A stretch of 64,000 bases of DNA from Chrysemys picta bellii (taxonomy: Eukaryota). The notes below the pieces were generated by a model, which searched no databases, was not told the origin of the DNA, and was given only the letters and a program-made list of their open reading frames with translations. A program made the translations under genes and the position numbers. This document shows positions 3,001-64,000 of the stretch, one piece after another (the first letter of the stretch is position 1; every line of letters begins with the position of its first letter). The stretch lies in NCBI RefSeq assembly GCF_011386835.1, contig NC_088793.1:205592001-205656000 (forward strand), in the 5' to 3' direction.

Positions 3001-4249
3001 TTTGTTTACGCATATGTTCAGTGTGCGAGAGTTAACATCAACCTCTCATATTTTACCCTTTCCAATCCATTGCCTGACTTGGGAGTCCAAAGCAAAGGAA
3101 AGGTATATAGGAAGGACAGTATATTATCCTCATTTTACAGGTGGGGAAAAGAGGAACAGAAAGGTGAAACAGCTTGACCAAGGCTGCATAGGAGGTCAGT
3201 GGCAGAACTGGGACTAAAACCCATGTCTCCTGGCTCCCAGCCCACTAGTCTACTCTGCCACCCAATAATTCATTTATATGGGCATCCCTCCACATCACTG
3301 AAGATGAATTTATCAGCGAAATTGATTAGGAAAATTTCTATCAAAACCAGCTGCAGTTATCGCTCAGTGATAAATTGCTTAGTCATGAGATAGCTAATAG
3401 TGCATCACACAAATGTTACCCCCGCATCCTAGATTTCAGATATAGCAGTGCGCTTCGCCTCTATGCAGTGTGTACTGTTAGGGTTAATTACCTCTGAAAA
3501 AGGTACTTCCTTTTCGCAGGGTCTAGGGCCCCCCTCTCCTTGCTGTCAGCAAGCAATGCATCCACCTGCACGGTAAGAGTCCAGCCTTCAGAGATGGACA
3601 GCACGGGGCAGATAGGCTCAGTGGCTCGGATATCAAAGAACAGTTGTTCCCAACCCCCACCCACAACATCGGGGGCACCACTTACCCTACCCAGACTGGA
3701 TCCCACCAACCCCACCAGGAGGGGGCACCGCTCCCCCTCCCCAGACTGGATTCCTCCCACCCACCTCTCCAGCAGGGGGCAGCGCCCCTCCTGCCCAGAC
3801 TAGATCCCCCACCCAGCCAGCGGGGGCACCGTTCCCCCTGCGCAGAGTGGATCCCCCACACCCCGCCGGCAGGGGGCGCCGCTCCCCCTCCCCAGACTGG
3901 ATCCCCCACACCCCGCCGGCAGGGGGCACCGCTCCCCCTCCCCAGACTGGATCCCCCCACACCCCGCCGGCAGGGGGCACCGCTCCCCCTCCCCAGACTG
4001 GATCCCCCACACCCTGCCGGCAGGGGGCACCGCTCCCCCTCCCCAGACTGGATCCCCCACACCCCGCCGGCAGGGGGCACCGCTCCCCCTCCCCAGACTG
4101 GATCCCCCACACTCCGCCGGCAGGGGGCGCCGCTCCCCGCGCTGTAGCTTCGGGGCGGGGGTGCGCGGGACGGGCGGTACCTGCTGCCGCAACTCGCGGC
4201 CCCGCCGCTGAGCCCCCTGCAGCGGGCTCCGGCCCCTCCGCCCGGACAT
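1..4249 (-). CDS. NPHP1: Nephrocystin-1, 5' part (coding exons 1-4; gene continues beyond the left edge)
   Basis: Coding exons 4181-4249 (69 bp, MSGRRGRSPLQGAQRRGRELRQQ), 3492-3565 (74 bp, VDALLADSKERGALDPAKRKYLFQ), 1062-1122 (61 bp, CMELKKSVDENTSVLQNLKK) and 1-63 (partial, TDEPAPVGNYNQRKEEEEKQL). All junctions are GT-AG and phase-consistent. Resembles the recalled human NPHP1 N-terminal coiled coil ([28 protein letters not shown]...ADESAPVANYNQRKEEE). Confidence 0.95.
3121..3258 (-). mobile_element. MIR-like CORE-SINE
   Basis: attatcctcattttacaggtggggaaa...ccaaggctgcata...ggcagaactgggact is the reverse of the MIR core. Confidence 0.6.
3670..4140. repeat. 50-bp GC-rich minisatellite, about 9 copies, filling most of NPHP1 intron 1
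   Basis: Unit CAGGGGGCACCGCTCCCCCTCCCCAGACTGGATCCCCCACACCCCGCCGG (e.g. 4021-4070); copies degenerate toward exon 2. Confidence 0.95.
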
Positions 4250-4350
4250 CGTCGCTAAGGAGACGAACGCTTGGGCGCTCGGAACTGTCGTCATCGCCGC
4301 GCGTCGCGAACATCAGAGGGCGGGGGAGCCCGCAGCGGAGACAGAGGCGA

Positions 4351-4372
4351 ACTACGCGTCCCAGCATGCAAC
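4351..4372 (+). promoter_or_regulatory. ZNF143/THAP11-type (ACTACA-SBS) motif, NPHP1 promoter
   Basis: ACTACGCGTCCCAGCATGCAAC fits the ACTACAnnTCCCAGnATGCA consensus, about 100 bp upstream of the NPHP1 ATG. Confidence 0.75.
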
Positions 4373-4410
4373 GGGGCGGGCGGGCGAGCTCCTGAATCAC
4401 TGGCAGAGAC

Positions 4411-5538
4411 AACAACAACAAGGAGGAGTCCGGTGGCGCCTTAAAGACTAACAGATTTATTGGGCCTAAGCTTTCCTGGGTAAAAACCTCACTTCTTCGG
4501 CTGCATGGAGTGAAAGTTACAGCTGCAGGCATCAGATACTGACCCATGGAGAGCAGGGAGTTACTTCGCAAGTGGAGCACCAGTGTGGACAGGGCCAATC
4601 CCATCAGGGTGGATGTAGTCCACTCCCAATAATAGATGAGGAGATGTCAAGTCCAGGAGAGGCAAAGCTGCATCTGTAGTGAGCCAGCCACTCTCAGTCC
4701 CTAGTCAAACCCAGATTAATGGGGTTCAATTTGCAAATGAAGTTTAGTTCGGCTGTTGGAAGTCTGTTTCTGAAGTTTTTTTGTTCAATGATAGTGACTT
4801 TGAAATCTGTACTAGAATGACCAGGGAGATTGAAGTGTTCACTGACTGGCTTATGTATGTTACCATTCCTGAGGTCCGATTTGTGTCCATTTACTCTTTT
4901 GCGGAGGGACTCTCCGGTTTGGCCAATGTACATGGCAGAGGGGCATTGCTGGCACATATCACATTAGTGGATGTGCAGGTGAATGAGCCCTTGATGGTGT
5001 GGCTGATGTGGTTGGGTCCTCTGATGGTGTCGCTGGAGTAGATATGGGGACAGAGTCGGCAATGAGGTTTGCTACAGGGATTGGTTCCTGGGTTGGTGTT
5101 TCTGTGGTGTGGTGTAGTGTATAGTTGCTGGTATTTGTTTCAGGTTGGGGAGTTGTCTGTAAGCGAGGACTGGCCTGCTTCCCAAGGTCTGTGAGAGCGA
5201 GGGATCATTTTCCAGGATAGGTTGTAGGTCGTGGATAATGCGCTGGAGAGGTTTTAGCTGGGGGCTGTACGTGATGGCCAGTGGTGTTCTGGTATTGTCC
5301 CTGTTGGGCCTGTCCTGTAGTAGGTGTCAACACTGGTTCTCCACTTGCGAAGTAACTCCCTGCTCTCCATGGGTCAGTATATAATGCCTGCATCTGTAAC
5401 TTTCACTCTATGCATCCGAAGAAGTGAGGTTTTTACCCACGAAAGCTTATGCCCAAATAAATCTGTTAGTCTTTAAGGTGCCACCAGACTCCTTATTGTT
5501 TTTGTAGATACAGACTAACACCGCTACCCCCTGATACT
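4411..5538 (-). mobile_element. Penelope-like element (GIY-YIG type), 5'-truncated, with inverted pseudo-LTRs
   Basis: Minus-strand remnant encodes the RT-EN linker (RTPLAITYSPQLKPLQRII...AYRQLPNLKQ) and GIY-YIG domain (CQQCPSAMYIGQT...HFNLPGHS...AELNFICKL). Arms about 4411-4589 and 5327-5505 are inverted copies. Flanks TGGCAGAGAC (4401-4410) and TGGCAAAGAC (5539-5548) look like a 10-bp TSD with one mismatch. Confidence 0.9.
5412..5452 (+). ncRNA. Candidate minimal type I hammerhead ribozyme in Penelope pseudo-LTR (U4C core variant)
   Basis: GCAT-CCGAAGA-A-GTGAGG-ttttta-CCCAC-GAAA-GCTT-ATGC: stem I GCAT/ATGC, stem II GTG.G/C.CAC, palindromic AAGCTT in place of stem III. Confidence 0.55.
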
Positions 5539-5546
5539 TGGCAAAG

Positions 5547-5567
5547 ACTACACGTCCCAGAATGCAC
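5547..5567 (+). promoter_or_regulatory. ZNF143-type motif 2 (distal to the Penelope insertion)
   Basis: ACTACACGTCCCAGAATGCAC. Confidence 0.75.
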
Positions 5568-5623
5568 TGGGGCCCGAAAGTCACGCTCTCCTGTACCAGG
5601 CCTCGCTTGGAGCCTAGCGAGCA

Positions 5624-5644
5624 GTGCATGCTGGGGGCTGTAGT
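5624..5644 (-). promoter_or_regulatory. ZNF143-type motif 3 (inverted)
   Basis: The reverse complement reads ACTACAGCCCCCAGCATGCAC. Confidence 0.7.
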
Positions 5645-8600
5645 CTGCACGGGCCTAGCTCTCAGTGCTGTGTGTCTAGGTTAGTTGGAGGCTTGGAGGG
5701 ATTGGGGTTGTAACCAGTGGGTGCTGCTGATTTCACCTGCTAGGCGGCTGTGATTGCACCCACACACACAAAATATCCCCACTGAAGGGTAAAGGGAGGC
5801 AAAGAAAAATGCTGCTTGAGAATGTCTAGAGACAGTCAGTGCATAATGATTGTCTCAGTTGTGGGGAACGACAATTTAAATAACTATACATTTGAAAACA
5901 GGCTCAGAAATAAACATCTACATTATCCCCCAAAATTATACAAAATAAAAATTTAATTCTGCCAAACTTCTTGTTGTTATTGCCATAGCATAGCACTTAA
6001 GAGCTCCACTCATGGACAAGGACGGACCGACCATACTACAAAAAGAGACTTACAGTCTGCACAGCAGGGCTGTGTTGCAGGCAGAAATTCTAGCCGTGCA
6101 CCTGCTGGAATTCTTCTCTCTTACACCCACTGAGCCATGGAAGAAGCAATTTAATTTTCTGCGTAGCCTTTTCACATTAATTTGACATATTCCAAGGAAT
6201 TTTTTTCCTAGCAGGTGATCTGACATTTCTTCCCTCTGAACTCTAAACAGCTCCTACACTTCAGTATTTGCTGTTTGTTTCCAAAGTATTAGATAAGGAA
6301 ACGCAGCAGAGATGTACATAGAATTAATAGTGTTGTCAAGTTACAACATGTACTTGAGATCAAATGATCATGTGCCCTTTCCACATGAGGGTTTACTGTT
6401 TTTATTTTAATGATTTTTTTAAAAAACACTTTTAGGGTTATTGACAAGGCTTGAGAAAAAACTCCTTTGTAATCGTATTAAAATGATTAATTACGCTGAT
6501 ATATGCAACACCAGATTTAGAAAAAACTGTGCTGATATATCCAAAGAATTATTCAAGCCACTATCCAGAAATCTACCATCTATCTTTTCTTCTTCCTTTT
6601 TACCTTTTCCAGAAACAAATACTAGGTACACATTAAAAACATAAATAATTCATTGCAAAAAAAATGAATAAAAAAATCCTGGGTGCTTTAATAAATTAAA
6701 GTACAATTATATTTTAACATGTCAGTAAGTGCAAAGTTTGAGCTAGCACATGAACCATGTCTTCCAATGAATGACATTAAAATACCTGACCTCAGCTCCA
6801 TTTTGCACAGGATGCCCGCAAGTATATGCCAAATCACCATTAAATCAGCCTGATACAGCATTACACAGAAAACTTCTGTAACCAAGCTACATCTCAGCTA
6901 TAAAAGACACAAGATCTCCAACTTGGATAAGTCAACATTTCAAGATTCTGAATGGCATTGTTACACAGCAGCTGGGTTCACTGACCCCCTATGTTAGAAG
7001 GCATTGGAGCTCTGACGGATGGTGCACCTCATTAACTAATTCTGGGTATAAGTGAAGTGAGAGTGGCCCCCTGATCAGAGGAATCTAAGCCAGTGTTTCC
7101 CAGCTGGTGGGTCTCATGAAGATTCTATATGGATCACTGGGCCTTGAACTAGGCAAACATACACTTTACCAGCCAGGTGCAGAGAGGAGGGGACTGGAGA
7201 GTGAGGCTGTCCCACACTCACCCCACCGTGGTGGCTTCTGTCCTGCGAGGTTGGGCCTGGCTCCCCAGTCTGGGGATTGCAACCAGACACATGGGGTCGC
7301 AGAGCCACTGGCTGCCCTCCAAACCTGAGTGGTGCTGACACACTGTGTACCAGGTCGTAACACCTGGAGCAGAGACTAGCTAAGCCTAGTGCTGCGGAAC
7401 AAGAGCCGACTCAGTGGGGTGAGTGCATGGTGGGCTTGCTCTCCAAGCCCCCTTGTCCCGGCTTCCCCTCTGCACTGGGCCGGGATTCAGATTGCAGCGC
7501 AAGGGCAGAGGGTGCATATATGTAAGGGTGGGTTGCAAACAAGATGACAAAATGCAGTTGGTGGGTCACCTTCGTAAACAGTTTGGGAATCAATGGTCTA
7601 AGCCTTGCCAGTCCTAAGAGAAAAATCATAAGAACAGCCGAGCTTGGGGAGAAGGCATGGGCAGAATCTGTCTCCGCTTTTTTCTCTTTTTCCATTAGCT
7701 TATTAATAAAGTTAAAGCTAAGGGCAGGGAATGAATTCTGAACCTACATAGCCTTTAACTATTTTGGCACAATGTGGGGTTGGCATCTGCTTATAAATAT
7801 AAAAGGAGAACAAGATAGAAACACTTTAAAAATGTGTTGATTAGGAGATTTATTTTTTTTTTTGAGGGAAAAGCTGTGCACATATGCATGGAAGTAACAG
7901 AGAGATAGGGATGGCTGACATAGATGTAGCATGAGGCCCAGCAAGATTAATCAAAAAGGAAGTCCCAAGGATTTTAAATCATGATGTCCAGCATCTTTGC
8001 TGGAAGTGATGATGTGGCACAGTAAGTATATAGGGCTGATGTATTCTTAGTTATGGAGTTGGTAAGAGATCTAGACATAGAACATTGCTGAATTTCAGAG
8101 AAGAACCCCAGCATTACTGATTTAATATACGAATTTATCTTATCAGTGTACACTAGGATGCTTTTGCCTTAATCTTTTTGACCAACCCTTTGGTTGTATA
8201 CTTTCAAAGTTCCAAAATGTTTAACATCAGAATCTTTACATGTTTTCACTCCCCACCTAAGAGATACTTTATTACAAATTACTAGTAAGTAACTTAAGAT
8301 ATATCATTTTTAGTTTAATTTATTAAAATGTAAGGGTCAAATGTAGCTCAGGGCGAGCCTTAAGAGTCACAAAGCAAAACAGACACAAACATCCCTTAAA
8401 AACATAATGTGACAGGTTTGCACAGTCATAATACATATGAATTAATTAAGATCATCCCATAACATTTTGGTGGATAGGTTATTCTGATACATGTGAAGAT
8501 AAGCTTTGCTGATGTCAGTTTGGGCAAATGAGATTGTAGGATACCACAGATGCCTTCTTTTTTAGAATATGGTTGCTTATCAAAACATTTGTTTTTAAAG

Positions 8601-12038: not shown

Positions 12039-12326
12039 TCAGAGCCCGGAGCACTTGACTTGGGATCATGCTACAGGGCTACAAATAACAGTGTAGGCAT
12101 TCAGCTCAGAGCTCATGTTGGAGCCTGGGCTCGGAAACCCAGAAGGGGTTGAGCCTCCAAACTGGAGCAGGAATGTCTACACTGTTATTTTTAGCTGGAT
12201 GCAAGCCCTAGTGAGTTGATCCCAATGCCGAGACTCGCTGCTGTGGGTATTGTTTTTTGCCATTCAGACGTACCCTCAGGCCCCAATCTGCGCACACTTA
12301 CACAAGCGCTTCACTTTGCTTTACAC

Positions 12327-12557
12327 CAGGGGTTCTCAAATTGGGGGTCAGGACCCCTCAGGGGGTCACGAGGTTACTACATGGGGGGGGGGGAGGTCGC
12401 GAGCTGTCAGCCTCCATCCTAAGCCCCGCTTTGCCTCCAGCATTTATAATGGTGTTAAATATATATAAAAGTGTTTTTAATTTATAGGGGGGGGGGGTCG
12501 CACTCAGAGGCTTGCTATCTGAAAGGGGGCACCAGTACAAAAGTTTGAGAGCCGCTG
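12327..12557 (+). mobile_element. hAT-type MITE, same family, downstream of MTLN
   Basis: CAGGGGTTCTCAAA...TTTGAGAGCCGCTG; TSD CTTTACAC/CATTACAT (6/8). Confidence 0.85.
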
Positions 12558-12699
12558 CATTACATTGAGTCGGGAGGGGAGGTGGCACCACCCGCCAGAG
12601 GCTGGCCGCGTCTACACTGGAGAAAGCTGTATTCCTACCGTGTTAACACACACACACACACCTGAGGCAGGGCTTTACACACGACTTAGCCGCTGGCGG

Positions 12700-13150
12700 T
12701 AAATCCTGGCCCAGGCTCGGGCTGTGACACAAGTGAGGCCCGGGGGGGGACAGTCCGGGCCGCCCCAGGGCCCCGCCCCCAGCCAGAGCCGCGCCGCCCA
12801 AGGTCACGGCCCCGCCGCGCGCCGCTCAGGCCACGTCCAGCTTCTTCTGCGTGGCCTCCAGCAGACCCTGCAGCCGCCGCTTCCTCCAGGCCAGGAAGCG
12901 CCTGCGCACGCGGTGGGCCTGCCAGCCCACCAGCACGCCCGAGGCGAAGGCCAGCGCCAGCGCCAGCTGCACCGGCCGCTCCCGCAGCGCCTCCGAGCCC
13001 AACGCCATGCTCCTACGGCAGCCCCGCGCGCCCAAACTACCGCGGCGCGCGCGCGCCGGGCCTCTCCCAGGCGTCGGCACGCGCCCGCCTGTCGGGCCCC
13101 CTCCCGTCGCCTGGGCTCGAGGCCCGCGCGCGCCGCCACGTGGCAGGAGT
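12700..13150. promoter_or_regulatory. CpG island of MTLN with palindromic E-box GCCACGTGGC (13135-13144)
   Basis: Dense CpG over the CDS and upstream region; a perfect 10-bp palindrome lies about 130 bp upstream of the ATG. Confidence 0.6.
12826..13008 (-). CDS. MTLN: Mitoregulin micropeptide (LINC00116/SMIM37 orthologue), 60 aa, uninterrupted CDS
   Basis: MALGSEALRERPVQLALALAFASGVLVGWQAHRVRRRFLAWRKRRLQGLLEATQKKLDVA closely matches recalled human MTLN (MADVSERTLQLSVLVAFASGVLLGWQANRLRRRYLDWRKRRLQDKLAATQKKLDLA). Lies in a CpG island next to NPHP1 on the same strand, as recalled for human 2q13. Confidence 0.95.
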   Translation of the reverse strand: MALGSEALRERPVQLALALAFASGVLVGWQAHRVRRRFLAWRKRRLQGLLEATQKKLDVA

Positions 13151-14955: not shown

Positions 14956-15099
14956 GCCTTGGGCCTCTCTGTCTAGGGCTAAGCATTAAGTCCACAGCTC
15001 CCCAAAAATGTAAATTAAGGTCAGTTCCTGTCGCATGGAACAGAGAGAGTATACAGGAACTGGGTGCTGAGATTGCACAGGAAAGGCAATAAGGCTAAT

Positions 15100-15295
15100 T
15101 ATCCATTGGAATAATTTACCAAGGGTCATGGTGGATTCTCCATCACTGGTAATTTTTAAATCCAAGCTGGATGTTTCTCTGAAAGATATGCTCTAGTTCA
15201 AAAGGAATTCTGTTGGGGGAGTTCTATTGCCAGTGTTATATAGGAGGTCAGACTAGATGATCACAAAGGTCCCTTCTGGCCTTGAAATCTATTGA
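15100..15295 (+). mobile_element. CR1 LINE 3' end fragment
   Basis: ggattctccatcactg...aggtcagactagatgatcac...ggtcccttctggccttgaaatctat, typical CR1 3' terminus. Confidence 0.75.
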
Positions 15296-16634
15296 ACAAG
15301 CCAACTCTAACAGGAGCAGAGAATAGCAAGCTGCCCAGTGAGGACAAAATGAGGTAGCTCAGGAGAGAGTGCAAGGGTAGCGTAATAAGAAAGCTATTAC
15401 CAGTTTTAAAAAGTAAACCACTAGAAATAACCCCGCATCACTTTTTGCAAGGTTAAGAATATTAATTTGGATGTCCTGGCTAAATTCTAACTCAAATAAT
15501 TACCCTCTGCGCAATGTAAGGGTCTGTTTGACACTTGGAATTTCCACGATGGTTAACAGGAATCAGCCAATAGCTATAGAAATATCCTTCTGTTCTTTTT
15601 GAGTTGCAATTGGGCAATATGTTCTCACACCCTATATCACAGAAACTCAGACTGACATCCATGGGGGCTGGATTGGGCCTAAAACTAGACAACAAAAATA
15701 TTTAATAGCGTTGCTTCACTTTCTTCAGATACCCCGTGCCTGAGTTTTCAAGGAGATTTAACTGTAAGAAGAAACTGAAGAGATAGTAGCAGGGATTATA
15801 ACCAGGTGCTTTTGAGCTCGAGGGATCAAAAACAAGCCAGAATTTTAAACGAAGATAATTTTGTGATCTGTAACTCAGATTGGTAACATGGAAGTGTTTT
15901 TTATATACTTCAGAGTAAATTTTACAATTTTCAGGCCAAATCTTCTGACCCAAAGTTGTAGGAGATCAAAAATTGGGTTTGATAATGGAAGCTGGCTACA
16001 ACCTTAAGAATAGAGAGTCTGCCACCTCTCTGTAATACCAGACCTCTTCAGACTGCTGAATCCAGACACTCCCAAACTCTGGGGAAGTTCAGATTTGTTT
16101 TCAAACTTTGCGGCTTGGGCACATCTCTTAGCTAAATGTTGTCAAAAGCAGGAAAGGAGAAGCCTATTGAGGCATAATGAGCAATTCACTCAATTCAGTG
16201 ATCTAAAAAGTGTTTCATTTCATTTTGCATTTACTACATATCTGACCCTGTATTATCTCTGTCCCTGCATAGATAAATGCTTTCTCAGAAGACCAAAAGG
16301 CACAGACTGCTTATGGAAATACCAAACAATCACATAGAAACAGGAGGGAGGGAAACCTCTGACTGCAAGCTGAGCTTCCTTTTCCTTTCTGCTGACACCA
16401 CACTAGCAGAGGGGCCTTCTGCAGAGGAAGGGAGAGCTGAGAACAGGAACTGATTAAGCCTGAATGTGATCCAGATTTACCACAAACCCAAGATGGCAAA
16501 TCCACGCATGCATTTCCTCTGGATTTGGTGGAGTCAATATAAATAACACCAACAATTTAGGTGCCAATTAAGGTTGCATCAGGACAGACTCCACTGACCC
16601 AAAACTTCTGATTTCCATGCTTTTAAGGTTAATC

Positions 16635-17430
16635 ACAGAGTCAGAGGTTAAAGCCAGAAGGGACCACAGATCATCTTGCCTGACCTCCTGCACATCACAG
16701 GTCACTAAACCCCACCCAGTTACCCATATAGTGAGCACAATAACCTGGACAAAAGTATTACAGCCCTCCAGAGACTAAATGACTGTGTGCCACAGGCAGA
16801 GAATAGGTGGGACTGAGGCGCACCAGTGCCCAAGCCATTGCAATGCCAGGGAATTGATTTGGTGAGATATACCTAGGAGAAATTGACCTGCATTCTTTGC
16901 GACCTTCACATCACCTATAATACTATTGAAATACCCTTCAATCTAAGGCTGTCACTTCCATCTTCAACAGTTACTGATCCATGAGAGGGCCTTCCCTCTT
17001 ATCCCAGGACTGCTTACTTTGCTGAAGAGCATTTGGTATGGGAGCTTGTCAGAGGCTTTCTGAAAGTCCAAGTACACTACATCCACTGGATCCCCCTTGT
17101 CCACATGCTTGTTGTCATCCTCAAAGAATTCTAATAGAATAGGTGAAGCATGATTTCCATTTACAAAAGCCATGTTGACTCTTCCCCAACTTACCATGTT
17201 CATCTATGTATGTGACAATTCTATCCTTTACTATAGTTTAAATCAGTTGCCTAGTACTGAAGGAAGGCTTACCGGCTTGTAACTGCCAGGATCGCACCTG
17301 TAGAACCCTGCGTGGATACAAAATGTATATCCGCGTCCGATCTGCAAACATGGTCTGCGGATATAAAGCGCCTATCCGCAGATTTACAGGGCTCTACACA
17401 TCTGGCGCCTTTTTTCAAAAATACAGCTAC
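16635..17430 (-). pseudogene. CR1 fragments (3' end 16635-16900; RT fragment about 16930-17430)
   Basis: The ORF track shows VDKGDPVDVVYLDFQKASDKLPYQ...GIRGKALSWISN, the CR1 RT LDFxKAFD motif. Confidence 0.8.
17301..17396. mobile_element. 96-bp hAT MITE inserted in a CR1 fragment
   Basis: TAGAACCCTG...CAGGGCTCTA; TSD CGCACCTG/CACATCTG. Confidence 0.7.
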
Positions 17431-19150: not shown

Positions 19151-22100
19151 TGCCTGCAAGCCTGTCCCTGGGCTGCCAGCTCCCTCCCCGGAGCCTTGAT
19201 GGGCAGGTCTGCACCCCCCCCCCCATGCACGCTGGGCTGTAGGGAGGGGCTCTTTGGCCAGAACCCCCCCTTTGCAGAACAAAGCTGGCAGCCTGCCCTT
19301 TGCCCCCTGCAAAGTGCCTGCACTAACCTCCGGGCGAGGGGCCACCTGCAGGGTGTGTCCGCTGGCCACGCTTCCCGGCCCGCTCTTGGCAAGAGGGGGA
19401 AGCCCTCTCTCTACCCTTCGACCTCCCTCTAGGGACGTCTAGGGGCGCAGGGCTAGCCATGGCCTGTCAGGCTTCGGTTTGCTGAGGGAGCGGGGCCTCG
19501 GCAGCTCCATCTGCTTTTGTAGCTTTATTCCCTGTTAAGAAATTGGACAGAGACCTCTGTGTAAGGAGGCAGTGTGGTCCAGTGGCTAGAGCATGGGATT
19601 CAGTCAGGAGACAGACCTGGATTATTTCCCTGGTTCTGCGACTAGCCCTCTAAAGAGAGGGGAAGTGACTCAGTCAGTGGGTGGGGATGCCATACTGGGG
19701 TATTTTAAAAATCAGTTGCCGATGGGATCGCAGGAAGGTGATGGAGACGACAAAGGCCCTTTCTACATGGCAAAATGTTTAGTCTTCTAACTGCATTTAC
19801 TATCTATGTTCTAAGCGACACCTGCTTACAGCACTTGTCTCCTGCACTGGATAAAGTGGGGGGTTATTTCATAGGGCATGTCTACACTGCAGGCATGGGG
19901 TGGGACTGCAGCTTGTGTAGACATACCTAAACCAGCTTTAATCTTGGTTTCAGAGTAGCAGCCATGTTAGTCTGTATCCGCAAAAAGAACAGGAGTACTT
20001 GTGGCACCTTAGAGACTAACACATTTATTAGAGCATAAGCTTTCATGGGCTACAGCCCACTTCTTCAGATGCATATCTTGTTAATCTTGTTAGTTGGATT
20101 GAAGTGAAGCCACCGTAGTTTCGGTCTCCACGTGCACTGTACAAGACTTGGGGCCCTTGGTAATTACGCAGGCAGCTAGCTTGTTCTGAAGCCTCGGATG
20201 CTGCCGCTTTTCTGCTCCAGAACCTGAGCTAGCTAATGTTCGCTTGGGTCTGTCTCCATGAGCCGCTGTTACACTCGTGATTGTGGTGTAGACATACCCC
20301 TAGTGTAGCGGGTATCTTAACCATGTTACAGAAATCTACAGAAATGGCTCTGTAGTGTAGGCAGGTTGTTTGACACGTCTACAGTCAACACAATTCAGCA
20401 CATCCATCAGCAGTGCTTTTTCTGACACAACTGTGTTAGCCTGTCTGTTTCTTCCCCTCTGTACAGTGGTGTTTGTATCCATGCATGCTGGGAAATTCTG
20501 TGTAACTATTGCCTATTGCCTCAGTTGCTGCGCAAGAAGCAGCCGATGTGTGGGTGTTCTTCACAGAGCAAAGTGTATTTTGGAATGGCCTCCTACATAG
20601 GGATGACCTGGGAGACAGAGGAATGGCTAAGCTGTCTGCACAGATGTTGATTTGGGGTCCTGAGACCCGATTCATGGCCTGAGAGTTATGTTACAGCCCT
20701 GGTCATGAGCAGAGTTGAAATACAGTCCAGAGACATGGTGAGAAACCATTTGTTCACCATACTTAGGTGTCTGTTTGTGGACATGAGCAGTGTGTTGTCA
20801 ACTATGTTACAAACTCCCTCTGGGGGGAAAAAAAACAAAAACACCAGTAGAGCAGGTGGGCTTAAAGAGCCTAGAAACGAAGAGCAGGTGTCTGGGAGCA
20901 AAGAGACGTCCTTTGGCACTGCTGCAGTTCTTCATGAGATCCACTAGATGTCAGGATCTCCCTGGCTGCTCGATTACAGACCTAAAAGTCACAATATTAC
21001 AACAACAAAAACAGACTCCAAGGAGAGACTGCTGAATTGGAATTAATTTGCAAATTGGACACCATTAAATTAGGCTTGAACAAAGACTGGGAGTGGATGG
21101 GCCATTACACAAAGTAAAACTATTTCCCCATGCTTATTTCCTCCCCCCCCCCCCCCCCCCCCCCACCCCTCCAGTTCCTCATATCTCCTTGTCAATTGCT
21201 GGAAATGGGCCATTTCCCTTACGACTCCAAGCAGGTTTGTTTTCCTCTCCTGCTGATAAAAGCTCACCTTAACTGATCACTCTCTTTATAGTGTGTATAG
21301 TAACACCCATTGTTTCATGTTCTCTGTGTGTGTATGTGTGTATCTATCTATCTATAATCTTCCTACTGTATTTTCCACTCCATGCATCCGATGAAGTGGG
21401 CTGTAGCCCACAAAAGCTTATGCCCAAATAAATTTGTTAGTCTCTAAGGTGCCACAAGTACTCCTGTTTTTTTTGTAGATGTCAACAGGTTCCTTTAAGC
21501 AGTTACTTGAGAAGAAAGACCCTCAATCACTGCATTTTAATAGTTAAGCCATTAAACACCGGTGAACACTGTGGGTCCTGTAAAGTCCTGTTAGAGTACA
21601 GACTTGCAGACACAGCCAAAACTTCCTCTCGTGCCCTCTGAACTAGCGAACCTGTGTTATTGCTCTTCCATGCCACATTAACAAGGCAGATGACTACCTG
21701 GCTCAGCTGCCAAAGTGCAAGCAGCCGAGCTGACTCTTCCTTGTTTAAAGGTGACCCAGAATGCTGCTGTGTATTGGCTAAACATACTCCGTATGGAGCT
21801 TCTCCATCCGTGTGTTAAATACTTGCACTGAAATCGTCTTTCTTTGAGACGAGCATGATAAGCGAATCAGCCCCTCTGTTCTGAGTCATTCATGCAATGA
21901 CACAATTGACAGAAACTAAAGGGGGGGCTGTATTGTAAATAGTGTGTATCTGGTACAAATGCAGTGAGATGGTAGGGTGATAATTTACATGTTTCCAGGA
22001 AAGAGAATTCAGGTGTTTGAAATCTATCCTAGGATGGCAAGAATCCTAGGTAGCTCATCCCTTTGAGAACTCCACCTCCGCTTCCCCCATCCAGAGTACT

Positions 22101-25100
22101 GCTAGGAGTACTTGGCTGTTGGCTACAAGAGAAGGAAAAAAAAAACATATGCTAATCTCCTCCATGGAGAGAGAAGAATAAAGTGCTCCCAGCACACAGC
22201 ACTTCCCTGGCAAAGTATTCCTAAAGTTATTAGACCGTTACTAGCCACCAGGTGATCTCACCTAAACCTCTCCTTGCATTGTATATTTCTAGCAATTTTA
22301 AATTTATAGTAAATAATCCTACAACCTTTTTGTTTTGCAATGAACTTTGGGTTTCTCTTCCAACATGAATAGGGGTGAGGAGAAGGTTGTATGTTTGCTT
22401 GTGCTTTTATAAATTAGAATTTATTTCAGAATCTGCATGTCATGAAGTCTCTTTATAGCACCATTATTCAGAGCACCATTTATTTTAATCTTCACCTAAA
22501 TGGAATGTCTCAAGGTAAAAAGATGCTTCCTTGGAAGGTCTCTTTGGAATTGCCTCTTTAAATGTAAGCGTGTCAAATTCTGACTGAATTAAACTGTGTC
22601 ACATTCTCCCACCCCCATCATCAACAGGACCTTCTCCTCGCAGCAGCTTATGTCTATGATGCTCAATATAATAGAAACATTCCGTTTGAAACCTCACCGC
22701 AAGCAGTCAGGTAAGAAAACACTCTAACATCCAGTACAACAATATTCTGTGTGAAGAATTAAAATATTTAACTGGGAAAATATCTTCACTTAATTGGGAT
22801 GAGGGGGACACTGGATACAAAGAAAATTTGGATTTAAATCAATTTAATTTATTCACTAAAGCTCGGCTCCCACAAATGTTTATGCACATGCTTAATCTAG
22901 CAACAAAGAATGTAGGCCATACTTCTGTGATGGGGGGGACTCTATCCTTGAGATGTTGAGAACAAAATGAATCAAGGAACAAAAGAACATAAGAAGAAGA
23001 AATTCTTTAATTGCCTGTACACCAATGCTAGCAGCCTGGGTAACAAACAAGGTGAATTGGAATTGCTCATTTTTTCTGCATAAATTCGATCTAGATGGGA
23101 TTACTGAAATCTGGTGGGATGATTTGCATGATTGGAATGTTAAAATCAATGGTTATAATGTGTTGAGGAAGGATCAAGTGAGCAAACGGGATGGGGAAGT
23201 GGCACTCTACATCAAAAATGACATTAGTGGTTTCTGAGTGACCAATAACTCAGAAGAAAATTATCTTTGTTCCTTAAGCATTAATGTCGGAACAGATAAA
23301 GCACACGATGGAGTATTAGGTGTCTGCTACGGACCACCAAATCACACTAGGGAACAGGGTGACCAACTCCTTACACTCCAGCCTATAACGTGTGTGTGGG
23401 GGCGGGGGAGAGAACCTGCATGATCATGGGGCACTTCAGTTTGAGTGACATGTGCTGGAGGTTCATGCTGCCCGCACTGAAACATCCTTGGAATTTCTAA
23501 GCATAATAGATGGCAATTTCCTAACTCAAAAAGTGTTGCAGCCAACATAGAACGAGGTCTAATGTAGAATTCCCTTAATGGATAAAGAGCAATTGATCAC
23601 AGAACTAAAAATTATTGGTAGCTTAGGTACAAGTGATTATAGCTGCTCACATTAGTCTAGACCATACACACACATTTTAGGAGATCAGTAGATAAAGGTA
23701 ATAGTGTTTGTAATAGACGTCTCTAAGATGTTTAACATGGTACCACTTGACATTAGATTAAAAAAACTAAAGCAATATAAAACGTATGGATCTCAAAATG
23801 TGATTGTAAATAGCGAATCCTCATCAAGTAGCTGTGCTTTGATTGGGGCCTGGCAGGGATCTGTTCTTAGCCCTACCATATTTAACGTTTTTATTAATGA
23901 CCTGGAAGGAAAAACTAAAATAATCACTCTGAAAGGTTGCAGATGACCCCCAAATTTAGGAAGTGGTAAAGAACTAAGACAACAGGTCATTGATTCAGAA
24001 CGACCTGGATTGTTTAGTAAACTGGTTGTAAGCAAGCACTATGCATTTTAATACAGCTAAATGTAAACGTCTACATCAGGGGTAGGCAATCTATGGCACG
24101 CGTGCCAAAGGCGGCATGCGAGCTGATTTTCAGTGGCACTCACACTGCCCGGGTCCTGGCCACCAGTCCGGGGGCTCTGCATTTTAATTTCATTTTAAAT
24201 GAAGCTTCTTAAACATTTTAAAAACCTTATTTACTTTACATACAATAATAGTTTAGTTCTATGTTCTAGACTTATAAAAAGAGACCTTCTAAAAACATTA
24301 AAATGTATGACTGGCATGCGAAACCTTAAATTAGAGTGAATAAATGAAGACTTGGCACAGCACTTCTGAAAGGTTGCCGACCCTGGTCTACATCTAGGAA
24401 TAAAGAATGGGGACGTCCCTCCTGGACGCAGTGACTCTCTGACAAAGATTTTGGTGTCATGGTGGATAATCAGCCGAACATGAGCTCTGTGTGATGCTGT
24501 GGAGAAAAGGACTAATATGATCCTTGGATGCATAAACAAGGGAATCTCAAGTGAGAGTAGAGAGGTGGTTTACTTGATAGTAAATTATGGATCGGTAACT
24601 GTTGGCAGGCATGCAGCCTTCCCCGCACCTTGTTCCTGGAGGGATCCGGTGTCACCAGCCCAACAACAGTGCAGGGAGCCCTCTGCAGCCTGGCTGTCAT
24701 GGACCCACTCTCGTGACAGCGGGACTGTAGAGGGCTCTCTGCAGGCGCCAGGCACGGGGAAATCTGGGGGCCTGGCCTGGCGGAGCAGACAACCCCAGCC
24801 AGGGCCATGAGGAGGAGGATGCTGAGGCCCTGGGGGAGGCCACCCTGCTGCTGTAATGCTTCTGCCTTGGGATAGAGCTGGGAGCTCATTCTCCTTCTTG
24901 TTAGGGTGACCATGTGTCCTGTTTTTAAAGGGACAGTCCCGTTTTTTGGGACTTTCTTATATAGGTGCCTATTACCTCCATTCTCCACCCCACCCCCTGT
25001 CCCGTTTTTTCACAGTTGCTATCTGGTCACCCTCCTTCTTGTGGTCCTGGCCATGGGGAGGCGTCTCTACTCCACCAGGCCAGGACTGCAGCATCCCTTG

Positions 25101-46737: not shown

Positions 46738-48700
46738 ATTTAAAGGGAAGAACTGCGTGATGGTAAACTAATAGACAACATGGAAACCAGTGAGAATGAC
46801 CTCGGAGGGGAAGAAATAACCAAGAAAAAGTCTAAAGGGCTGATGTTTAAAATAGCTTCTAAAAGTAAGTCCATTCCCGAAGGCTCTTCTCTGGGGAACG
46901 AATCCACTGCTGAATTCTCTGCTTGTCGGTCAGGTCTCTCGTGATTACAAATATTCCAGGGCGGTGAACTGCTGCTGGAAGACCCCTGGTGCTGACAAAC
47001 GGAGATTTACTGAATTGCTGTGAATTGGTATTAATCAACCCACAGCAATGAGTCAGTGAGTGCACTCTCGCAGGCGTGTGTGTGTTAGGTGCAGTGTGCC
47101 TCTACCCAACTGAGCCCCTCTCCAATAGCCTACTCGTGCACCGTTGCCATTACAGGATGGCGTGTTAACTTGACCATTTGGGGGGGAAGAAAAGAAAAGC
47201 TTAGTGGGACTGTAGAAGAAGCCACTCCTGGTGAGATGAGCTGTTCAAAACCTTAATTCTCCCCTGATCTCATCAAACACAGATGTCCAGGGCACTTCCA
47301 GTCCCAAGGCAGGGAGGGGAGCAGCCCTGCATTGGGGTGGCAGGGGAAGCTGATATAGGTGTAGCTGTCTCTGCAGCTAAAACCCACCTAGATCCCCTTT
47401 AAATGGCAGGCTGGGGCCAAGGAGTCTCTTTAGGAATATTTCCAACATGGACGAGAAGATATGTGAGTGAAGTATGATGGGAACTGGCAGGGCTCTTGGC
47501 TTGGCAGTTCATAGCCCCGGCACCTCTATGCTTGCTGCATCAGTTATGAAAGTTAAATTGCTTGAGCCCCCAGCACCTCTTTCATCGGAGCACGCCCACA
47601 TGTTTGTGCCATATTTGATCACAATCAGGCCCAACAGCCAATCAGAATGCAGTTTGGGGCTTTTGGGCATCCCCACTCCGATTCTAATAGTGTTTCTGCT
47701 GTTTTTATTGTAGCACTTTCTTTGTCAAGCTCCTGGGCTTTACAGCATGCGCTCGTTGCCTGCAGTAGCTACTTACACAAGGAACAGTCTTGGTGGTTCA
47801 GCTTCTCCAGATGTTAGGAAGCCTCTTTGTTGCTGTTTTCTCCTTGTATCCACTTCACTTTTATCCTGGCTGAGGCTCTTTGGTAACTCTTTGCAACTCT
47901 TACTGCTTGGTTTAATGCTCATCCTTCCCTCCCAGAAACTCTCTCCCTGTATCTTGGCTGTTTCCTGTTGAAGCTCACTATAAGCCTGGATTCACTGTTT
48001 AACACAAAAACTGACTGAAAGCCTGAGTCTAGGGGCCTCATATGGAGCTCCCTGCTTCAAGTGCTCTATCAAAACTAACAGGAGTACTTGTGGCACCTTA
48101 GAGACTAACAAATTTATTAGAGCATAAGCTTTCGTGGACTACAGCCCAAATCTATCAAAACTGCTTCATTTAAAAAAATCCCTTGAACGGGCAGCAGTTA
48201 ATGAAAACTGTTTGCTCTTTCAATGTGGATTTGTTCAGGATGTTCAAATAGTTATTGGGCAAAGTGCTAGAAAATGTGTTGTAGGGACCAATCCTACAGA
48301 GGGAGATTCTCACATGTATATGGTTTTTATAGTGGTAAATAACACATGCTGATTGAAAGAGCTGCCTTTGGTTGCTGGGGAATGGGGTGTAAGCCGGCAG
48401 GGTAGACACCTCAGTGACTTGTCACCCAGTGAGCAACATATCACAAAATGACTTGACTTGACCATTCAGCCTTTGAGCATAAAGTAGCCATTCCCTTGAT
48501 TTAACTAGCCGAGGCCAGTAGAGAAACCAATGTATTTTTTTTTTCTTTTCTCAGGGTACAGAACAGTTGACGCTTTGCTTCAGCGTATGTTTGAGGCAGA
48601 GATACTACCAGAAGATGATGGGCCATCAGTGGACGAAATCTTAAACCTCTCCCCTGCTGATGTTTACCCAAAGAATCCCACCTTTGACAGCGCTGCATAG
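19024..48700 (+). CDS. TPCN3: Two-pore channel 3 (TPC3), complete, 19 coding exons, 2277 nt = 758 aa + stop
   Basis: Exons 19024-19062, 22628-22710, 27512-27626, 28990-29118, 29595-29711, 33818-33936, 34216-34317, 35204-35330, 37310-37511, 38740-38884, 40770-40955, 42121-42185, 42827-42914, 43692-43761, 44378-44597, 44860-44950, 45698-45811, 46746-46864, 48555-48700. Phases close without a stop; all introns are GT-AG except 44598-44859 (AT-AC). Motifs: [28 protein letters not shown]4 RWSRFLRP, filter [12 protein letters not shown]4 LRVLRLIR, filter II VVNQWH. Exon 1 is the least certain (short, no conserved motif). Confidence 0.92.
19946..20074 (-). mobile_element. Solo Penelope pseudo-LTR nested inside a MITE
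   Basis: Contains gtagcagccatgttagtctgtatc...gtggcaccttagagactaac...gcataagctttc...cttcagatgcat, the same family as 4411-4589 and 5327-5538. Confidence 0.85.
20033..20072 (-). ncRNA. Candidate minimal type I hammerhead ribozyme with canonical CUGANGA/GAAA core
   Basis: The minus strand reads GCAT-CTGAAGA-A-GTGGG-ctgtag-CCCAT-GAAA-GCTT-ATGC. Confidence 0.65.
20968..21480 (+). mobile_element. Penelope 3' fragment (GIY-YIG C-terminus, 3' UTR, pseudo-LTR)
   Basis: Encodes [12 protein letters not shown] and, after a small deletion, [30 protein letters not shown]. Pseudo-LTR at about 21370-21480 with AATAAA at 21427-21432. Confidence 0.85.
22990..24590 (+). pseudogene. Degenerate CR1 ORF2 (APE endonuclease and RT pieces)
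   Basis: [65 protein letters not shown]; frameshifted and interrupted by a MITE. Confidence 0.85.
24077..24385. mobile_element. hAT MITE inserted in CR1
   Basis: CAGGGGTAGGCAATCT...AGGTTGCCGACCCTG; perfect TSD GTCTACAT. Confidence 0.9.
24902..25034. mobile_element. hAT/Tip100-like MITE
   Basis: TAGGGTGACCA...TGGTCACCCT. Confidence 0.7.
27110..27266 (+). mobile_element. CR1 3' end fragment
   Basis: ggactctccatccttagaggtttttaaag...ggttggtcctgctttgagcagagggttggattagat. Confidence 0.7.
27305..27352. mobile_element. 48-bp hAT micro-MITE
   Basis: CAGTGGTGGG...CCCACCACTG with perfect TSD CTTTGGGT (27297-27304, 27353-27360). Confidence 0.85.
28378..28570 (+). mobile_element. MIR-like CORE-SINE
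   Basis: ggcagtgttgcctaaaggatagagca...gaaagtcacttcacctctctgtaaactggggataat. Confidence 0.6.
31350..32200 (+). mobile_element. CR1 3' portion (RT C-terminus and 3' UTR)
   Basis: [32 protein letters not shown]; ends ggtctgacccagcaaggccattcttatg. Confidence 0.85.
32464..32718. mobile_element. Putative Harbinger-type MITE
   Basis: TTA|GGCTTTGTCTACAC...GTAGACATAGCC|TTA (3-bp TSD). Confidence 0.75.
44598..44859 (+). other. U12-type (minor spliceosome) AT-AC intron of TPC3, 262 bp
   Basis: 5' end ATATCCTTTC (U12 donor consensus), branch site TCCTTAAC at 44845-44852, terminal AC at 44858-44859. Joining G|TT gives in-frame NQWH-V-LANGF. Confidence 0.93.
46705..46734. repeat. (AT)15 microsatellite in the TPC3 exon 18 acceptor region
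   Basis: gggATATAT...ATATtttatttaaAG|G; AG at 46744-46745. Confidence 0.95.
48077..48150 (-). mobile_element. 74-bp Penelope pseudo-LTR fragment with perfect 12-bp TSD
   Basis: TCTATCAAAACT at 48065-48076 and 48151-48162 flanks aacaggagtacttgtggcaccttagagactaac...gctttcgtggactacagccc. Confidence 0.9.
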
Positions 48701-51069: not shown

Positions 51070-63900
<12,831 letters not shown>

Positions 63901-63914
63901 CAAGGTTCCCCTTT

Positions 63915-64000
63915 AAAAAGCAACAGAGGGTCCTGTGGCACCTTTAAGACCAACAGAAGTATTGGGAGCATAAGTTTTCGTGGGTAAGAACCTCACTTCT
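63915..64000 (-). mobile_element. Penelope pseudo-LTR end upstream of TMEM178A (truncated by the window edge)
   Basis: ctgtggcacctttaagaccaacagaagtattgggagcataagttttcgtgggtaagaacctcacttct matches the pseudo-LTR at 4411-4500. Confidence 0.8.

What the first reader, a model, noticed from the sequence alone, without database searches (positions are those of the whole stretch)
4351..5644. A Penelope insertion splits a triple ZNF143-type motif cluster in the NPHP1 promoter
Seen: SBS-type motifs at 4351-4372, 5547-5567 and 5624-5644 (inverted), with a 1.13-kb Penelope element between the first and second. The apparent TSD (TGGCAGAGAC/TGGCAAAGAC) overlaps the first bases of motif 2, so removing the element and one TSD copy places motifs 1 and 2 about 58 bp apart in one compact promoter. 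Known: ZNF143 sites mark CpG-island and often bidirectional promoters. Inference: the insertion displaced two of three sites from a ciliopathy-gene promoter, and the orphaned distal pair may drive a new transcript or act as a proximal enhancer.
Basis: partly seen in the sequence, partly recalled or inferred. Interest (0 to 1): 0.75.

Follow-up and report, generated by a model that had tools for sequence, protein, structure and literature searches.

The report
Retrotransposon splits conserved NPHP1 promoter sites
In the painted turtle and the diamondback terrapin, a dead 1.1-kb Penelope-like retrotransposon sits inside an anciently conserved trio of ZNF143/THAP11-type sites in the NPHP1 promoter, moving two of them about 1.2 kb away; the insertion is well proven, but any effect on the gene is untested.

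Summary
Three SBS2-type (ACTACA + ZNF143 core) motifs lie at 4351, 5547 and 5626-5644 (inverted); 0.01 are expected by chance. Between motifs 1 and 2 lies a 1,128-bp 5'-truncated, fold-back Penelope-like element (4411-5538) with a 10-bp target-site duplication (4401-4410 and 5539-5548).

The window is Chrysemys picta bellii. NPHP1 exon 1 is on the minus strand, with its annotated start site at 4294, 57 nt from motif 1.

Malaclemys shares the insertion, with a secondary 385-bp deletion. The event therefore dates to the deirochelyine stem. The trio is as conserved as the coding exon and is recognisable in alligator.

Function is unresolved. The annotated NPHP1 start site is unchanged. The displaced motifs have no substitutions, while the DNA around them has lost about half of its CpGs; both signals are weak. 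I found no evidence for a new transcript, and read data could not be obtained. This is a well-documented natural promoter-architecture experiment, not a new kind of system.

The parts
4181..4249 (-). NPHP1 exon 1 coding part (MSGRRGRSPLQGAQRRGRELRQQ, then a GT donor)
   Evidence: Translation. Weak match to the N-terminus of PDB nephrocystin-1 6o1q (E 0.13, residues 2-23 to 6-27). In all 11 sauropsid loci (L001-L012 less L003's duplicate of the window) the gene called here has a product of 685-729 aa, with SH3 domains in all but Pogona, and lies downstream of MTLN. 83% of columns are invariant across 9 turtles.
4250..4294 (-). NPHP1 5' UTR up to the annotated transcript start at 4294
   Evidence: The gene start in L003 is 18715. 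L003 is 100% identical to the window, and window coordinate = 23009 - locus coordinate. Malaclemys and Dermochelys show the same 57-nt offset from motif 1.
4351..4375 (+). SBS2 motif 1 (ACTACGCGTCCCAGCATGCAACGGG), kept in the proximal promoter at -57 to -81
   Evidence: 84% invariant columns across 9 turtles.
4401..4410 (.). Left copy of the 10-bp target-site duplication, TGGCAGAGAC (one A>G change)
   Evidence: Seven empty-site turtles carry this sequence once (TGGCAAAGAC in Emys and one Mauremys, with 1-2 changes at its first bases in the others).
4411..5324 (-). Main 5'-truncated Penelope-like copy: 3' repeat arm 4412-4591 with a hammerhead-like motif, and a decayed ORF 4694-5326 ending in GIY-YIG (intact ORF piece 4694-4957)
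   Evidence: one frame, only 2 stops in 211 codons. Pfam GIY-YIG E 0.0019, 18.9 bits against a cut-off of 22.6. Nearest Atlas cluster carries GIY-YIG, score 0.95.
5325..5505 (+). Inverted 5'-truncated copy of the element's 3' region (right arm of the fold-back)
   Evidence: 91.7% complementary to 4412-4591. The layout matches that described for Penelope-like elements in PMC8557442.
5506..5538 (+). 33-bp 3' 'tail' (AGATACAGACTAACACCGCTACCCCCTGATACT), present at this end only
   Evidence: The same tail ends an independent Penelope-like insertion in L005-L008. A 30-40-bp tail at one end is typical of these elements (PMC8557442).
5539..5548 (.). Right copy of the target-site duplication, TGGCAAAGAC (ancestral state), overlapping motif 2 by 2 nt
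5547..5571 (+). SBS2 motif 2 (ACTACACGTCCCAGAATGCACTGGG), displaced to about -1253
   Evidence: Over the 26 nt printed, identical in Chrysemys, Malaclemys, Emys, L005 and L006.
5620..5644 (-). SBS2 motif 3 (inverted; ACTACAGCCCCCAGCATGCACTGCT on the minus strand), displaced to about -1326
   Evidence: 84% invariant columns across 9 turtles.
5549..5755 (.). Displaced outer part of the ancestral promoter and CpG-island shoulder, showing CpG erosion outside the motifs
   Evidence: 6 of 13 ancestral CpGs are lost in Chrysemys and 4 of 13 in Malaclemys, against 0 of 10 in Emys and 1 of 36 on the NPHP1 side. CpG observed/expected is 0.39 against 0.64 in Emys.
12826..13008 (-). Mitoregulin (MTLN) ORF, used as the syntenic anchor to fetch orthologous loci
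   Evidence: PF22002; exact match in two assemblies.

Best explanation
Shown: the ancestor of Chrysemys and Malaclemys (deirochelyine emydids), after its split from Emys, acquired a dead-on-arrival Penelope-like retroelement. The element is 5'-truncated, consists of a main copy plus an inverted 5'-truncated copy with a 33-bp tail, and made a 10-bp target-site duplication. It integrated exactly at the 5' edge of the second of three SBS2 (ZNF143 / THAP11-HCF1) sites in the NPHP1 core promoter. That trio, with two direct sites 63-64 nt apart and one inverted site 54-81 nt further out, is conserved in every other turtle examined. It is recognisable in a softshell turtle and in alligator. The insertion left site 1 at -57 of the annotated NPHP1 start and moved sites 2 and 3 from about -120 and -195 to about -1250 and -1330 (about -880 and -960 in Malaclemys, which later deleted 385 bp of the element).

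Inferred: NPHP1 is still transcribed from the same start, driven by site 1 and the GC-rich core. The displaced pair most likely still binds its factors and works as a promoter-proximal upstream module rather than as a new promoter. The intervening shoulder DNA has drifted out of the unmethylated island.
For: The motifs are real and non-random. The window is 100% identical to the Chrysemys picta bellii assembly. Empty sites with one copy of the target sequence occur in 7 turtles. Malaclemys has the filled site with an identical right junction and the same internal inversion breakpoint. Flank divergence is 1.6% to Malaclemys and 3.1% to Emys, which brackets the event. The Penelope-like layout rests. 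The motifs are as conserved as the coding exon (68-84% invariant columns against 23-36% in the spacers). Alligator and Pelodiscus keep three recognisable sites in the same orientation pattern. The annotated start keeps its 57-nt offset from site 1 in both filled species and in Dermochelys, and the NPHP1 product is 702 aa in both filled species. All 12 lineage-specific substitutions in 5549-5755 fall outside motifs 2 and 3 (P about 0.03), and the CpG inside motif 2 survives although 6 of 13 ancestral CpGs in 5539-5760 are lost.
Against: Gene starts come from automated annotation. The time since insertion is short (no more than about 3% divergence), so intact motifs are only weak evidence of constraint, and part of the shared branch predates the insertion. 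The CpG erosion could equally mean the displaced module is being silenced. That erosion is not unique to filled lineages: the two Mauremys are also CpG-poor there (observed/expected 0.30 and 0.45). ZNF143/THAP11 binding in turtles is assumed from mammalian data.
Confidence: 0.6

Rival explanations
1. The displaced pair is functionally orphaned and decaying. The insertion brought DNA methylation that spread over 5539-5760. Sites 2 and 3 are no longer used, NPHP1 runs on site 1 alone, and the motifs are intact only because too little time has passed.
For: CpG>TpG/CpA losses are concentrated in the displaced flank: 6 of 13 in Chrysemys and 4 of 13 in Malaclemys, against 0 of 10 in Emys and 1 of 36 on the proximal side (Fisher P 0.0007 and 0.036). 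CpG observed/expected falls from 0.64 (Emys) to 0.39. Flank divergence since the split from Emys is only about 3%.
Against: Motifs 2 and 3 have zero changes among 12 lineage substitutions (P about 0.03), and the CpG in motif 2 is kept in both species. The numbers are small, the region was defined after seeing the data, and Mauremys shows low CpG there without any insertion.
Confidence: 0.25
2. One reading: the orphaned pair now drives a new transcript, either divergent on the plus strand or reading into the element.
For: SBS sites are associated with bidirectional promoters (PMC3082894, listed). Motif 3 is inverted. A conserved block lies 60-110 nt beyond it (5700-5745, 59% invariant columns).
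Against: No gene is called between MTLN and NPHP1 in any of the annotated genomes examined. The flank is losing CpGs, which is not expected of an active island promoter. No RNA data are available. The conserved block exists in empty-site species too, so any divergent transcript would predate the insertion.
Confidence: 0.1
3. The insertion is an assembly artefact, or the two species acquired it independently.
For: Fold-back Penelope-like structures are known to trouble assemblies (PMC8557442). The family stayed active: Malaclemys has a private copy at L002:6857-7038. Within-element divergence between the two species (6.2%) exceeds flank divergence (1.6%).
Against: Two independent assemblies of two species have the same right junction, the same orientation and the same internal breakpoint at about 5325, and both keep a copy of the left target-site duplicate. 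The duplication and the empty sites match base for base.
Confidence: 0.03

Closest known systems
SBS2 sites (ZNF143/Staf site with 5' ACTACAN; THAP11/Ronin-HCF-1 site; promoter motif M4 ACTAYRNNNCCCR), Ngondo-Mbongo et al. 2013, PMC3627581
   Same: All three motifs have ACTACR, two or three variable bases, then (T/C)CCCAG-A/C-ATGCA. They lie within about 220 nt of a start site in a GC-rich promoter and occur as multiple sites per promoter, as in that paper's model.
   Different: Binding was not tested in turtles. Two of the three sites now sit 1.25-1.35 kb upstream. NPHP1 was not found discussed as a ZNF143 target in the paper library.
Canonical endonuclease-positive Penelope-like elements (Penelope/Poseidon, Neptune, Nematis): Arkhipova and colleagues; Craig et al. 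2021, PMC8557442; Cervera & de la Pena 2014, PMC4209133
   Same: C-terminal GIY-YIG remnant, heavy 5' truncation, an inverted 5'-truncated copy forming flanking inverted repeats, a 30-40-bp tail at one end only, a short target-site duplication, and a hammerhead-like motif in the terminal repeat.
   Different: No reverse transcriptase is left, so the clade cannot be assigned. The hammerhead-like core reads CCGAAGA (position 4 is C, not U), and no Rfam hammerhead model matches it.
Transposable-element insertions that rewire or split promoters and regulatory modules (a general, well-known class)
   Same: A lineage-specific transposable element is fixed inside a conserved cis-regulatory cluster, with orthologous empty sites in relatives.
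   Different: Here the element does not donate binding sites. It separates pre-existing, anciently conserved ones whose spacing had been held at 63-64 nt, and no phenotype or expression change has been shown.

Membership tests
SBS2 / ZNF143-THAP11 composite site | 25-bp layout: ACTACAN followed by the 18-bp SBS1 core (TTCCCA..ATGCA..GCG) | tested here: met
   Three matches to ACTACNNNTCCCAGNANGC, 0.01 expected. Layout compared with the probes quoted in PMC3627581.
SBS2 / ZNF143-THAP11 composite site | Promoter-proximal position near a start site | tested here: met
   Site 1 is 57 nt from the annotated NPHP1 start. In empty-site turtles all three sites lie within about 100-270 nt of the annotated gene start.
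SBS2 / ZNF143-THAP11 composite site | Evolutionary constraint on the motif relative to its flanks | tested here: met
   68-84% invariant columns in the motifs against 23-36% in the spacers across 9 turtles. Recognisable in alligator and Pelodiscus.
SBS2 / ZNF143-THAP11 composite site | Occupancy by ZNF143 and/or THAP11-HCF1 | not testable with these tools
   No ChIP data; needs an experiment.
Penelope-like element (endonuclease-positive) | Penelope-type reverse transcriptase | tested here: not met
   The copy is 5'-truncated. No Pfam hit in the upstream ORF pieces. Absence is expected for truncated copies, so this does not argue against a Penelope-like origin.
Penelope-like element (endonuclease-positive) | C-terminal GIY-YIG endonuclease | tested here: inconclusive
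   PF01541 at E 0.0019 and 18.9 bits, below the 22.6 cut-off. The YIGQTG...R...H motif is visible. The nearest Atlas cluster carries GIY-YIG, score 0.95 with 205 of 256 shared features.
Penelope-like element (endonuclease-positive) | Pseudo-LTR or inverted 5'-truncated copy, plus a 30-40-bp tail at one end | tested here: met
   Arms 4412-4591 / 5325-5505 and a 33-bp tail 5506-5538 at one end only. Description in PMC8557442.
Penelope-like element (endonuclease-positive) | Hammerhead ribozyme motif in the terminal repeat | tested here: inconclusive
   A CCGAAGA - hairpin - GAAA motif is visible at 5416-5446 and in the left arm. No Rfam hammerhead hit at E up to 10. The core has C at position 4.
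Penelope-like element (endonuclease-positive) | Insertion with a target-site duplication and an orthologous empty site | tested here: met
   10-bp duplication matching at 9 of 10 positions. A single copy of the target in 7 turtles.
Bidirectional promoter | A second gene or transcript starting within 1 kb on the opposite strand | tested here: not met
   The next called gene upstream is MTLN, on the same strand and 7-8 kb away in the eight cryptodiran turtle loci. Non-coding transcripts could not be checked.

The most novel reading that the evidence does not exclude
The insertion created a natural split-promoter allele. The displaced SBS2 pair has become an autonomous ZNF143/THAP11-dependent start region for a deirochelyine-specific transcript, or a methylation-sensitive upstream switch. 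NPHP1 dosage or tissue pattern in painted turtles and terrapins would then differ measurably from other turtles.
Probability: 0.1. Interest if true: 0.6.

Novelty: new member of a known kind. Interest (0 to 1): 0.4.

Why it matters
The trio of SBS2 sites in the NPHP1 promoter has kept its order, orientation and 63-64-nt spacing across all the cryptodiran turtles examined, and a similar pattern is recognisable in the softshell turtle Pelodiscus and in alligator. That makes it a strongly constrained promoter module of a ciliopathy gene. Two living genera carry a fixed 1.1-kb (0.75-kb in Malaclemys) wedge inside it, and a sister genus, Emys, does not. This is a clean natural experiment on whether multiple ZNF143/THAP11 sites must be adjacent and phased to work. 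It is directly testable by comparing start-site usage, factor occupancy and methylation between closely related species. It does not reveal a new mechanism, and no functional effect is shown yet.

Tried and rejected
No statement here rests on RNA or population data.

2. Rfam search for hammerhead ribozymes in the element arms and in the neighbouring better-preserved copy found no hammerhead hit at E up to 10. The motif is visible only by eye.

3. Pfam scans of the upstream ORF pieces for reverse transcriptase found nothing.

4. A long target-site duplication that includes the motif was considered, because motifs 1 and 2 form an 85%-identical 27-nt direct repeat. I rejected it: both motifs exist 63-64 nt apart in empty-site species.

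5. Independent insertions in Chrysemys and Malaclemys were considered because within-element divergence is 6.2% against 1.6% in the flanks. I rejected this because the junction and the internal breakpoint are identical.

6. The PDB sequence search with the 23-aa exon 1 gave only a weak nephrocystin-1 match (E 0.13). Gene identity rests mainly on synteny and the called SH3-domain gene.

7. NPHP1 was not joined across exons.

8. No contig taken for human was fetched. The only mammalian locus fetched was platypus (L013). Lizard (Pogona) and platypus showed no SBS cluster at the annotated NPHP1 start, so the depth of conservation claimed stops at turtles plus alligator.

9. The paper search for NPHP1 together with ZNF143 returned nothing relevant.

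Full report
**1. What is in the sequence**

The SBS-type pattern ACTACNNNTCCCAGNANGC (up to 1 mismatch) occurs three times in the 64-kb window and nowhere else. The sites are 4351-4369 (+), 5547-5565 (+) and 5626-5644 (-). Dinucleotide-preserving shuffles give 0.01 matches, and none of 100 reach three.

Extended to 25 nt, the sites read:
- ACTACGCGTCCCAGCATGCAACGGG
- ACTACACGTCCCAGAATGCACTGGG
- ACTACAGCCCCCAGCATGCACTGCT (minus strand)

This is the SBS2 layout of Ngondo-Mbongo et al. (PMC3627581): the 18-bp ZNF143 site preceded by ACTACAN. That paper reports that ZNF143 and THAP11 bind this composite site in a mutually exclusive way.

**2. The gene**

On the minus strand, an ATG at 4249-4247 opens MSGRRGRSPLQGAQRRGRELRQQ, followed by a GT donor.

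- This 23-aa peptide gives a weak hit to the N-terminus of PDB nephrocystin-1 (6o1q, E 0.13).
- In every sauropsid locus fetched, the gene called at this position has a product of 685-729 aa. Its precomputed Pfam hits are SH3 domains in all loci but Pogona. It lies downstream of mitoregulin.
- That MTLN-NPHP1 neighbourhood is the same as in human, from my own knowledge.

I accept NPHP1. [quoted passage not shown] The annotated gene start maps to window 4294, giving a 45-nt 5' UTR and placing motif 1 at -57 to -81.

**3. The insert**

Positions 4411-5538 (1,128 bp) carry these features:
- Inverted arms at 4412-4591 and 5325-5505, 91.7% complementary over 181 nt.
- A minus-strand reading frame from 5326 to 4694 with only two stops in 211 codons.
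- That frame ends in MCQQCPSAMYIGQTGESLRKRVNGHKSD..., a GIY-YIG signature. Pfam scores PF01541 at E 0.0019, which is below the curated cut-off. The nearest ESM-Atlas cluster carries GIY-YIG at score 0.95.
- A 33-bp extension at 5506-5538, on the right end only.

This is the arrangement Craig et al. describe for Penelope-like elements: heavy 5' truncation, an inverted 5'-truncated copy abutting the 5' end so that inverted repeats flank the unit, and a 30-40-bp tail at one end (PMC8557442).

Other points:
- The same tail sequence ends other copies in the window and an independent insertion in other turtles. The right boundary is therefore defined by the element family as well as by the duplication.
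- The arms carry a hammerhead-like CCGAAGA - hairpin - GAAA motif. No Rfam hammerhead model matches it, and core position 4 is C rather than U.
- No reverse transcriptase remains, so the copy was dead on arrival and its clade cannot be assigned.

**4. The decisive test: empty sites**

I used the mitoregulin ORF (12826-13008, minus strand) as a syntenic anchor and fetched 20-kb loci from twelve other assemblies.

| Locus | Species or assembly | State |
|---|---|---|
| L004 | Emys orbicularis | empty |
| L005 | GCA_003597395.2 (groups with Gopherus by sequence; I recall it as Chelonoidis) | empty |
| L006, L007 | two Mauremys assemblies | empty |
| L008 | Gopherus flavomarginatus | empty |
| L009 | Dermochelys coriacea | empty |
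| L001 | Natator depressus | empty |
| window / L003 | Chrysemys picta bellii | filled |
| L002 | Malaclemys terrapin pileata (PMC12886999) | filled, with deletion |

In all seven empty-site species the three motifs lie together, with motif 1 and motif 2 starts 63-64 nt apart. The target sequence occurs once, as in Emys...CCTGAATCACTGGCAAAGACTACACGTCCCAG....

In the window the same sequence is duplicated as TGGCAGAGAC (4401-4410) and TGGCAAAGAC (5539-5548) on either side of the element.

Malaclemys has the same right junction and the same internal breakpoint, and it retains the left duplicate. It lacks window 4411-4795 through a deletion between the short AGAGAC/AGTGAC homologies.

Flank substitution divergence is 1.6% to Malaclemys and 3.1% to Emys. 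The insertion therefore happened on the deirochelyine stem, after the split from Emys and before Chrysemys and Malaclemys diverged.

**5. How constrained was the module?**

Across nine turtles, the share of invariant columns is:

| Segment | Invariant columns |
|---|---|
| Motif 1 | 84% |
| Motif 2 | 68% |
| Motif 3 | 84% |
| Exon 1 coding sequence | 83% |
| Spacers | 23-36% |

Pelodiscus keeps three recognisable cores. Alligator keeps three sites in the same orientation pattern, with 62 nt between the two direct ones. Pogona and platypus show no such cluster at the annotated start. The insertion therefore broke an arrangement held since at least the common ancestor of turtles and crocodilians.

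**6. Consequences: shown and inferred**

Shown:
- The annotated NPHP1 start keeps its 57-nt offset from motif 1 in both filled species, as in Dermochelys.
- The predicted protein is full length at 702 aa.
- Motifs 2 and 3 are unchanged in both filled species.

Weak signals:
- By parsimony, 12 substitutions occurred on the deirochelyine branches within 5549-5755, and all lie outside the 48 motif positions (P about 0.03).
- Of the 13 CpGs ancestral to that flank, Chrysemys lost 6 and Malaclemys 4 (3 shared), all by CpG>TpG/CpA. Emys lost 0 of 10, and 1 of 36 were lost on the NPHP1 side.

I read this as follows. The shoulder of the island, now cut off behind a presumably methylated element, has become methylated in the germline. 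The two sites themselves, including the CpG inside motif 2, stay protected, which implies they are still occupied.

Caveats:
- The counts are small.
- The region was chosen after looking at the data.
- Part of the shared branch predates the insertion.
- The two Mauremys are CpG-poor there without any insertion.

The suggestion that the orphaned pair drives a new transcript has no support so far. No gene is called between MTLN and NPHP1 in any annotation. MTLN runs in the same direction as NPHP1, so a bidirectional promoter is not demonstrated.

**7. Comparison and novelty**

The sites meet the sequence, position and conservation criteria of SBS2; occupancy is untested. The insert meets the structural criteria of a Penelope-like element. 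Its endonuclease match is sub-threshold, its reverse transcriptase is absent through truncation, and its hammerhead is degenerate.

Transposable-element insertions in promoters are a well-known phenomenon. What is particular here is that the element separates pre-existing, deeply conserved and tightly spaced sites rather than donating new ones, and that filled and empty states exist in closely related living genera.

I rate it a new member of a known kind, with interest 0.4: a tidy, fully verified natural experiment with no demonstrated effect. Earlier notes of this scan on other parts of the same genome describe abundant Penelope-like fold-backs, 10-bp duplications and the position-4 U-to-C hammerhead core. 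They agree with what I saw here, but they are not independent evidence.

Noticed in passing
window 3671-4138; L002:18167-19749: A GC-rich 50-bp minisatellite in NPHP1 intron 1, just after exon 1, has 9.3 copies in Chrysemys and 31.3 copies in Malaclemys. It is also present in Natator.
   Followed up: partly
L002:17894-17920 versus window 4411-4795: Malaclemys has deleted the left arm of the fold-back and the end of the GIY-YIG ORF (385 bp) between the short AGAGAC/AGTGAC homologies. Divergence between the two species inside the element forms a gradient: about 15% next to the deletion, about 6% in the middle and about 2.5% in the right arm, against 1.6% in the flanks. The cause is unexplained; it could be error-prone repair, gene conversion or fast CpG decay.
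   Followed up: partly
L002:6845-7358 (orthologous point: window 15635/15636): Malaclemys carries a private insertion. Its first 180 bp are 97.7% identical to the right arm of the NPHP1-promoter element, followed by about 310 bp similar to window 24072-24383. It is absent from Chrysemys, so this Penelope-like family stayed active around or after the species split.
   Followed up: partly
L006:about 16940-17120, and the same place in L005, L007 and L008 (orthologous point near window 5847): An independent Penelope-like fold-back with the same kind of tail (…CAGACTAACACGGCT…CTCTGATAT) and a duplication of about 10 bp (TAGAGAYAT) lies about 200 bp beyond motif 3 in Mauremys, Gopherus and L005. It is absent in emydids and sea turtles. 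The NPHP1 upstream region was therefore hit at least twice in turtle evolution.
   Followed up: partly
window 5700-5745: A conserved block, TTGTAACCAGTGGGTGCTGCTGATTTCACC, lies 60-110 nt beyond motif 3 and is shared by all the cryptodiran turtles aligned (59% invariant columns). Its function is unknown. In tortoises and Mauremys it is preceded by a GTAAGT-like donor.
   Followed up: no
L006 and L007, between motifs 2 and 3: Both Mauremys assemblies lack about 27 bp of the spacer between motifs 2 and 3 (54 nt start to start against 79-81 in most other turtles aligned; Dermochelys 60). That spacing is therefore free to vary, whereas the 63-64-nt spacing of motifs 1 and 2 is not.
   Followed up: partly
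window 19950-20130 (-), 21270-21560 (+), 47980-48280 (-), 63830-64000 (-): There are four further fragments of related Penelope-like 3' repeats. The copy at about 20033-20072 has a near-canonical CUGAAGA - GUGGGC/GCCCAU - GAAA hammerhead core, yet no Rfam hammerhead model matches it at E up to 10.
   Followed up: partly
L012 (Pogona) 14989-15309; L013 (platypus) 12259-12579: The lizard NPHP1 promoter has no SBS-type site and instead shows a TGACGTCA palindrome. The annotated platypus start lies in AT-rich DNA without a cluster and may not be the true promoter.
   Followed up: no
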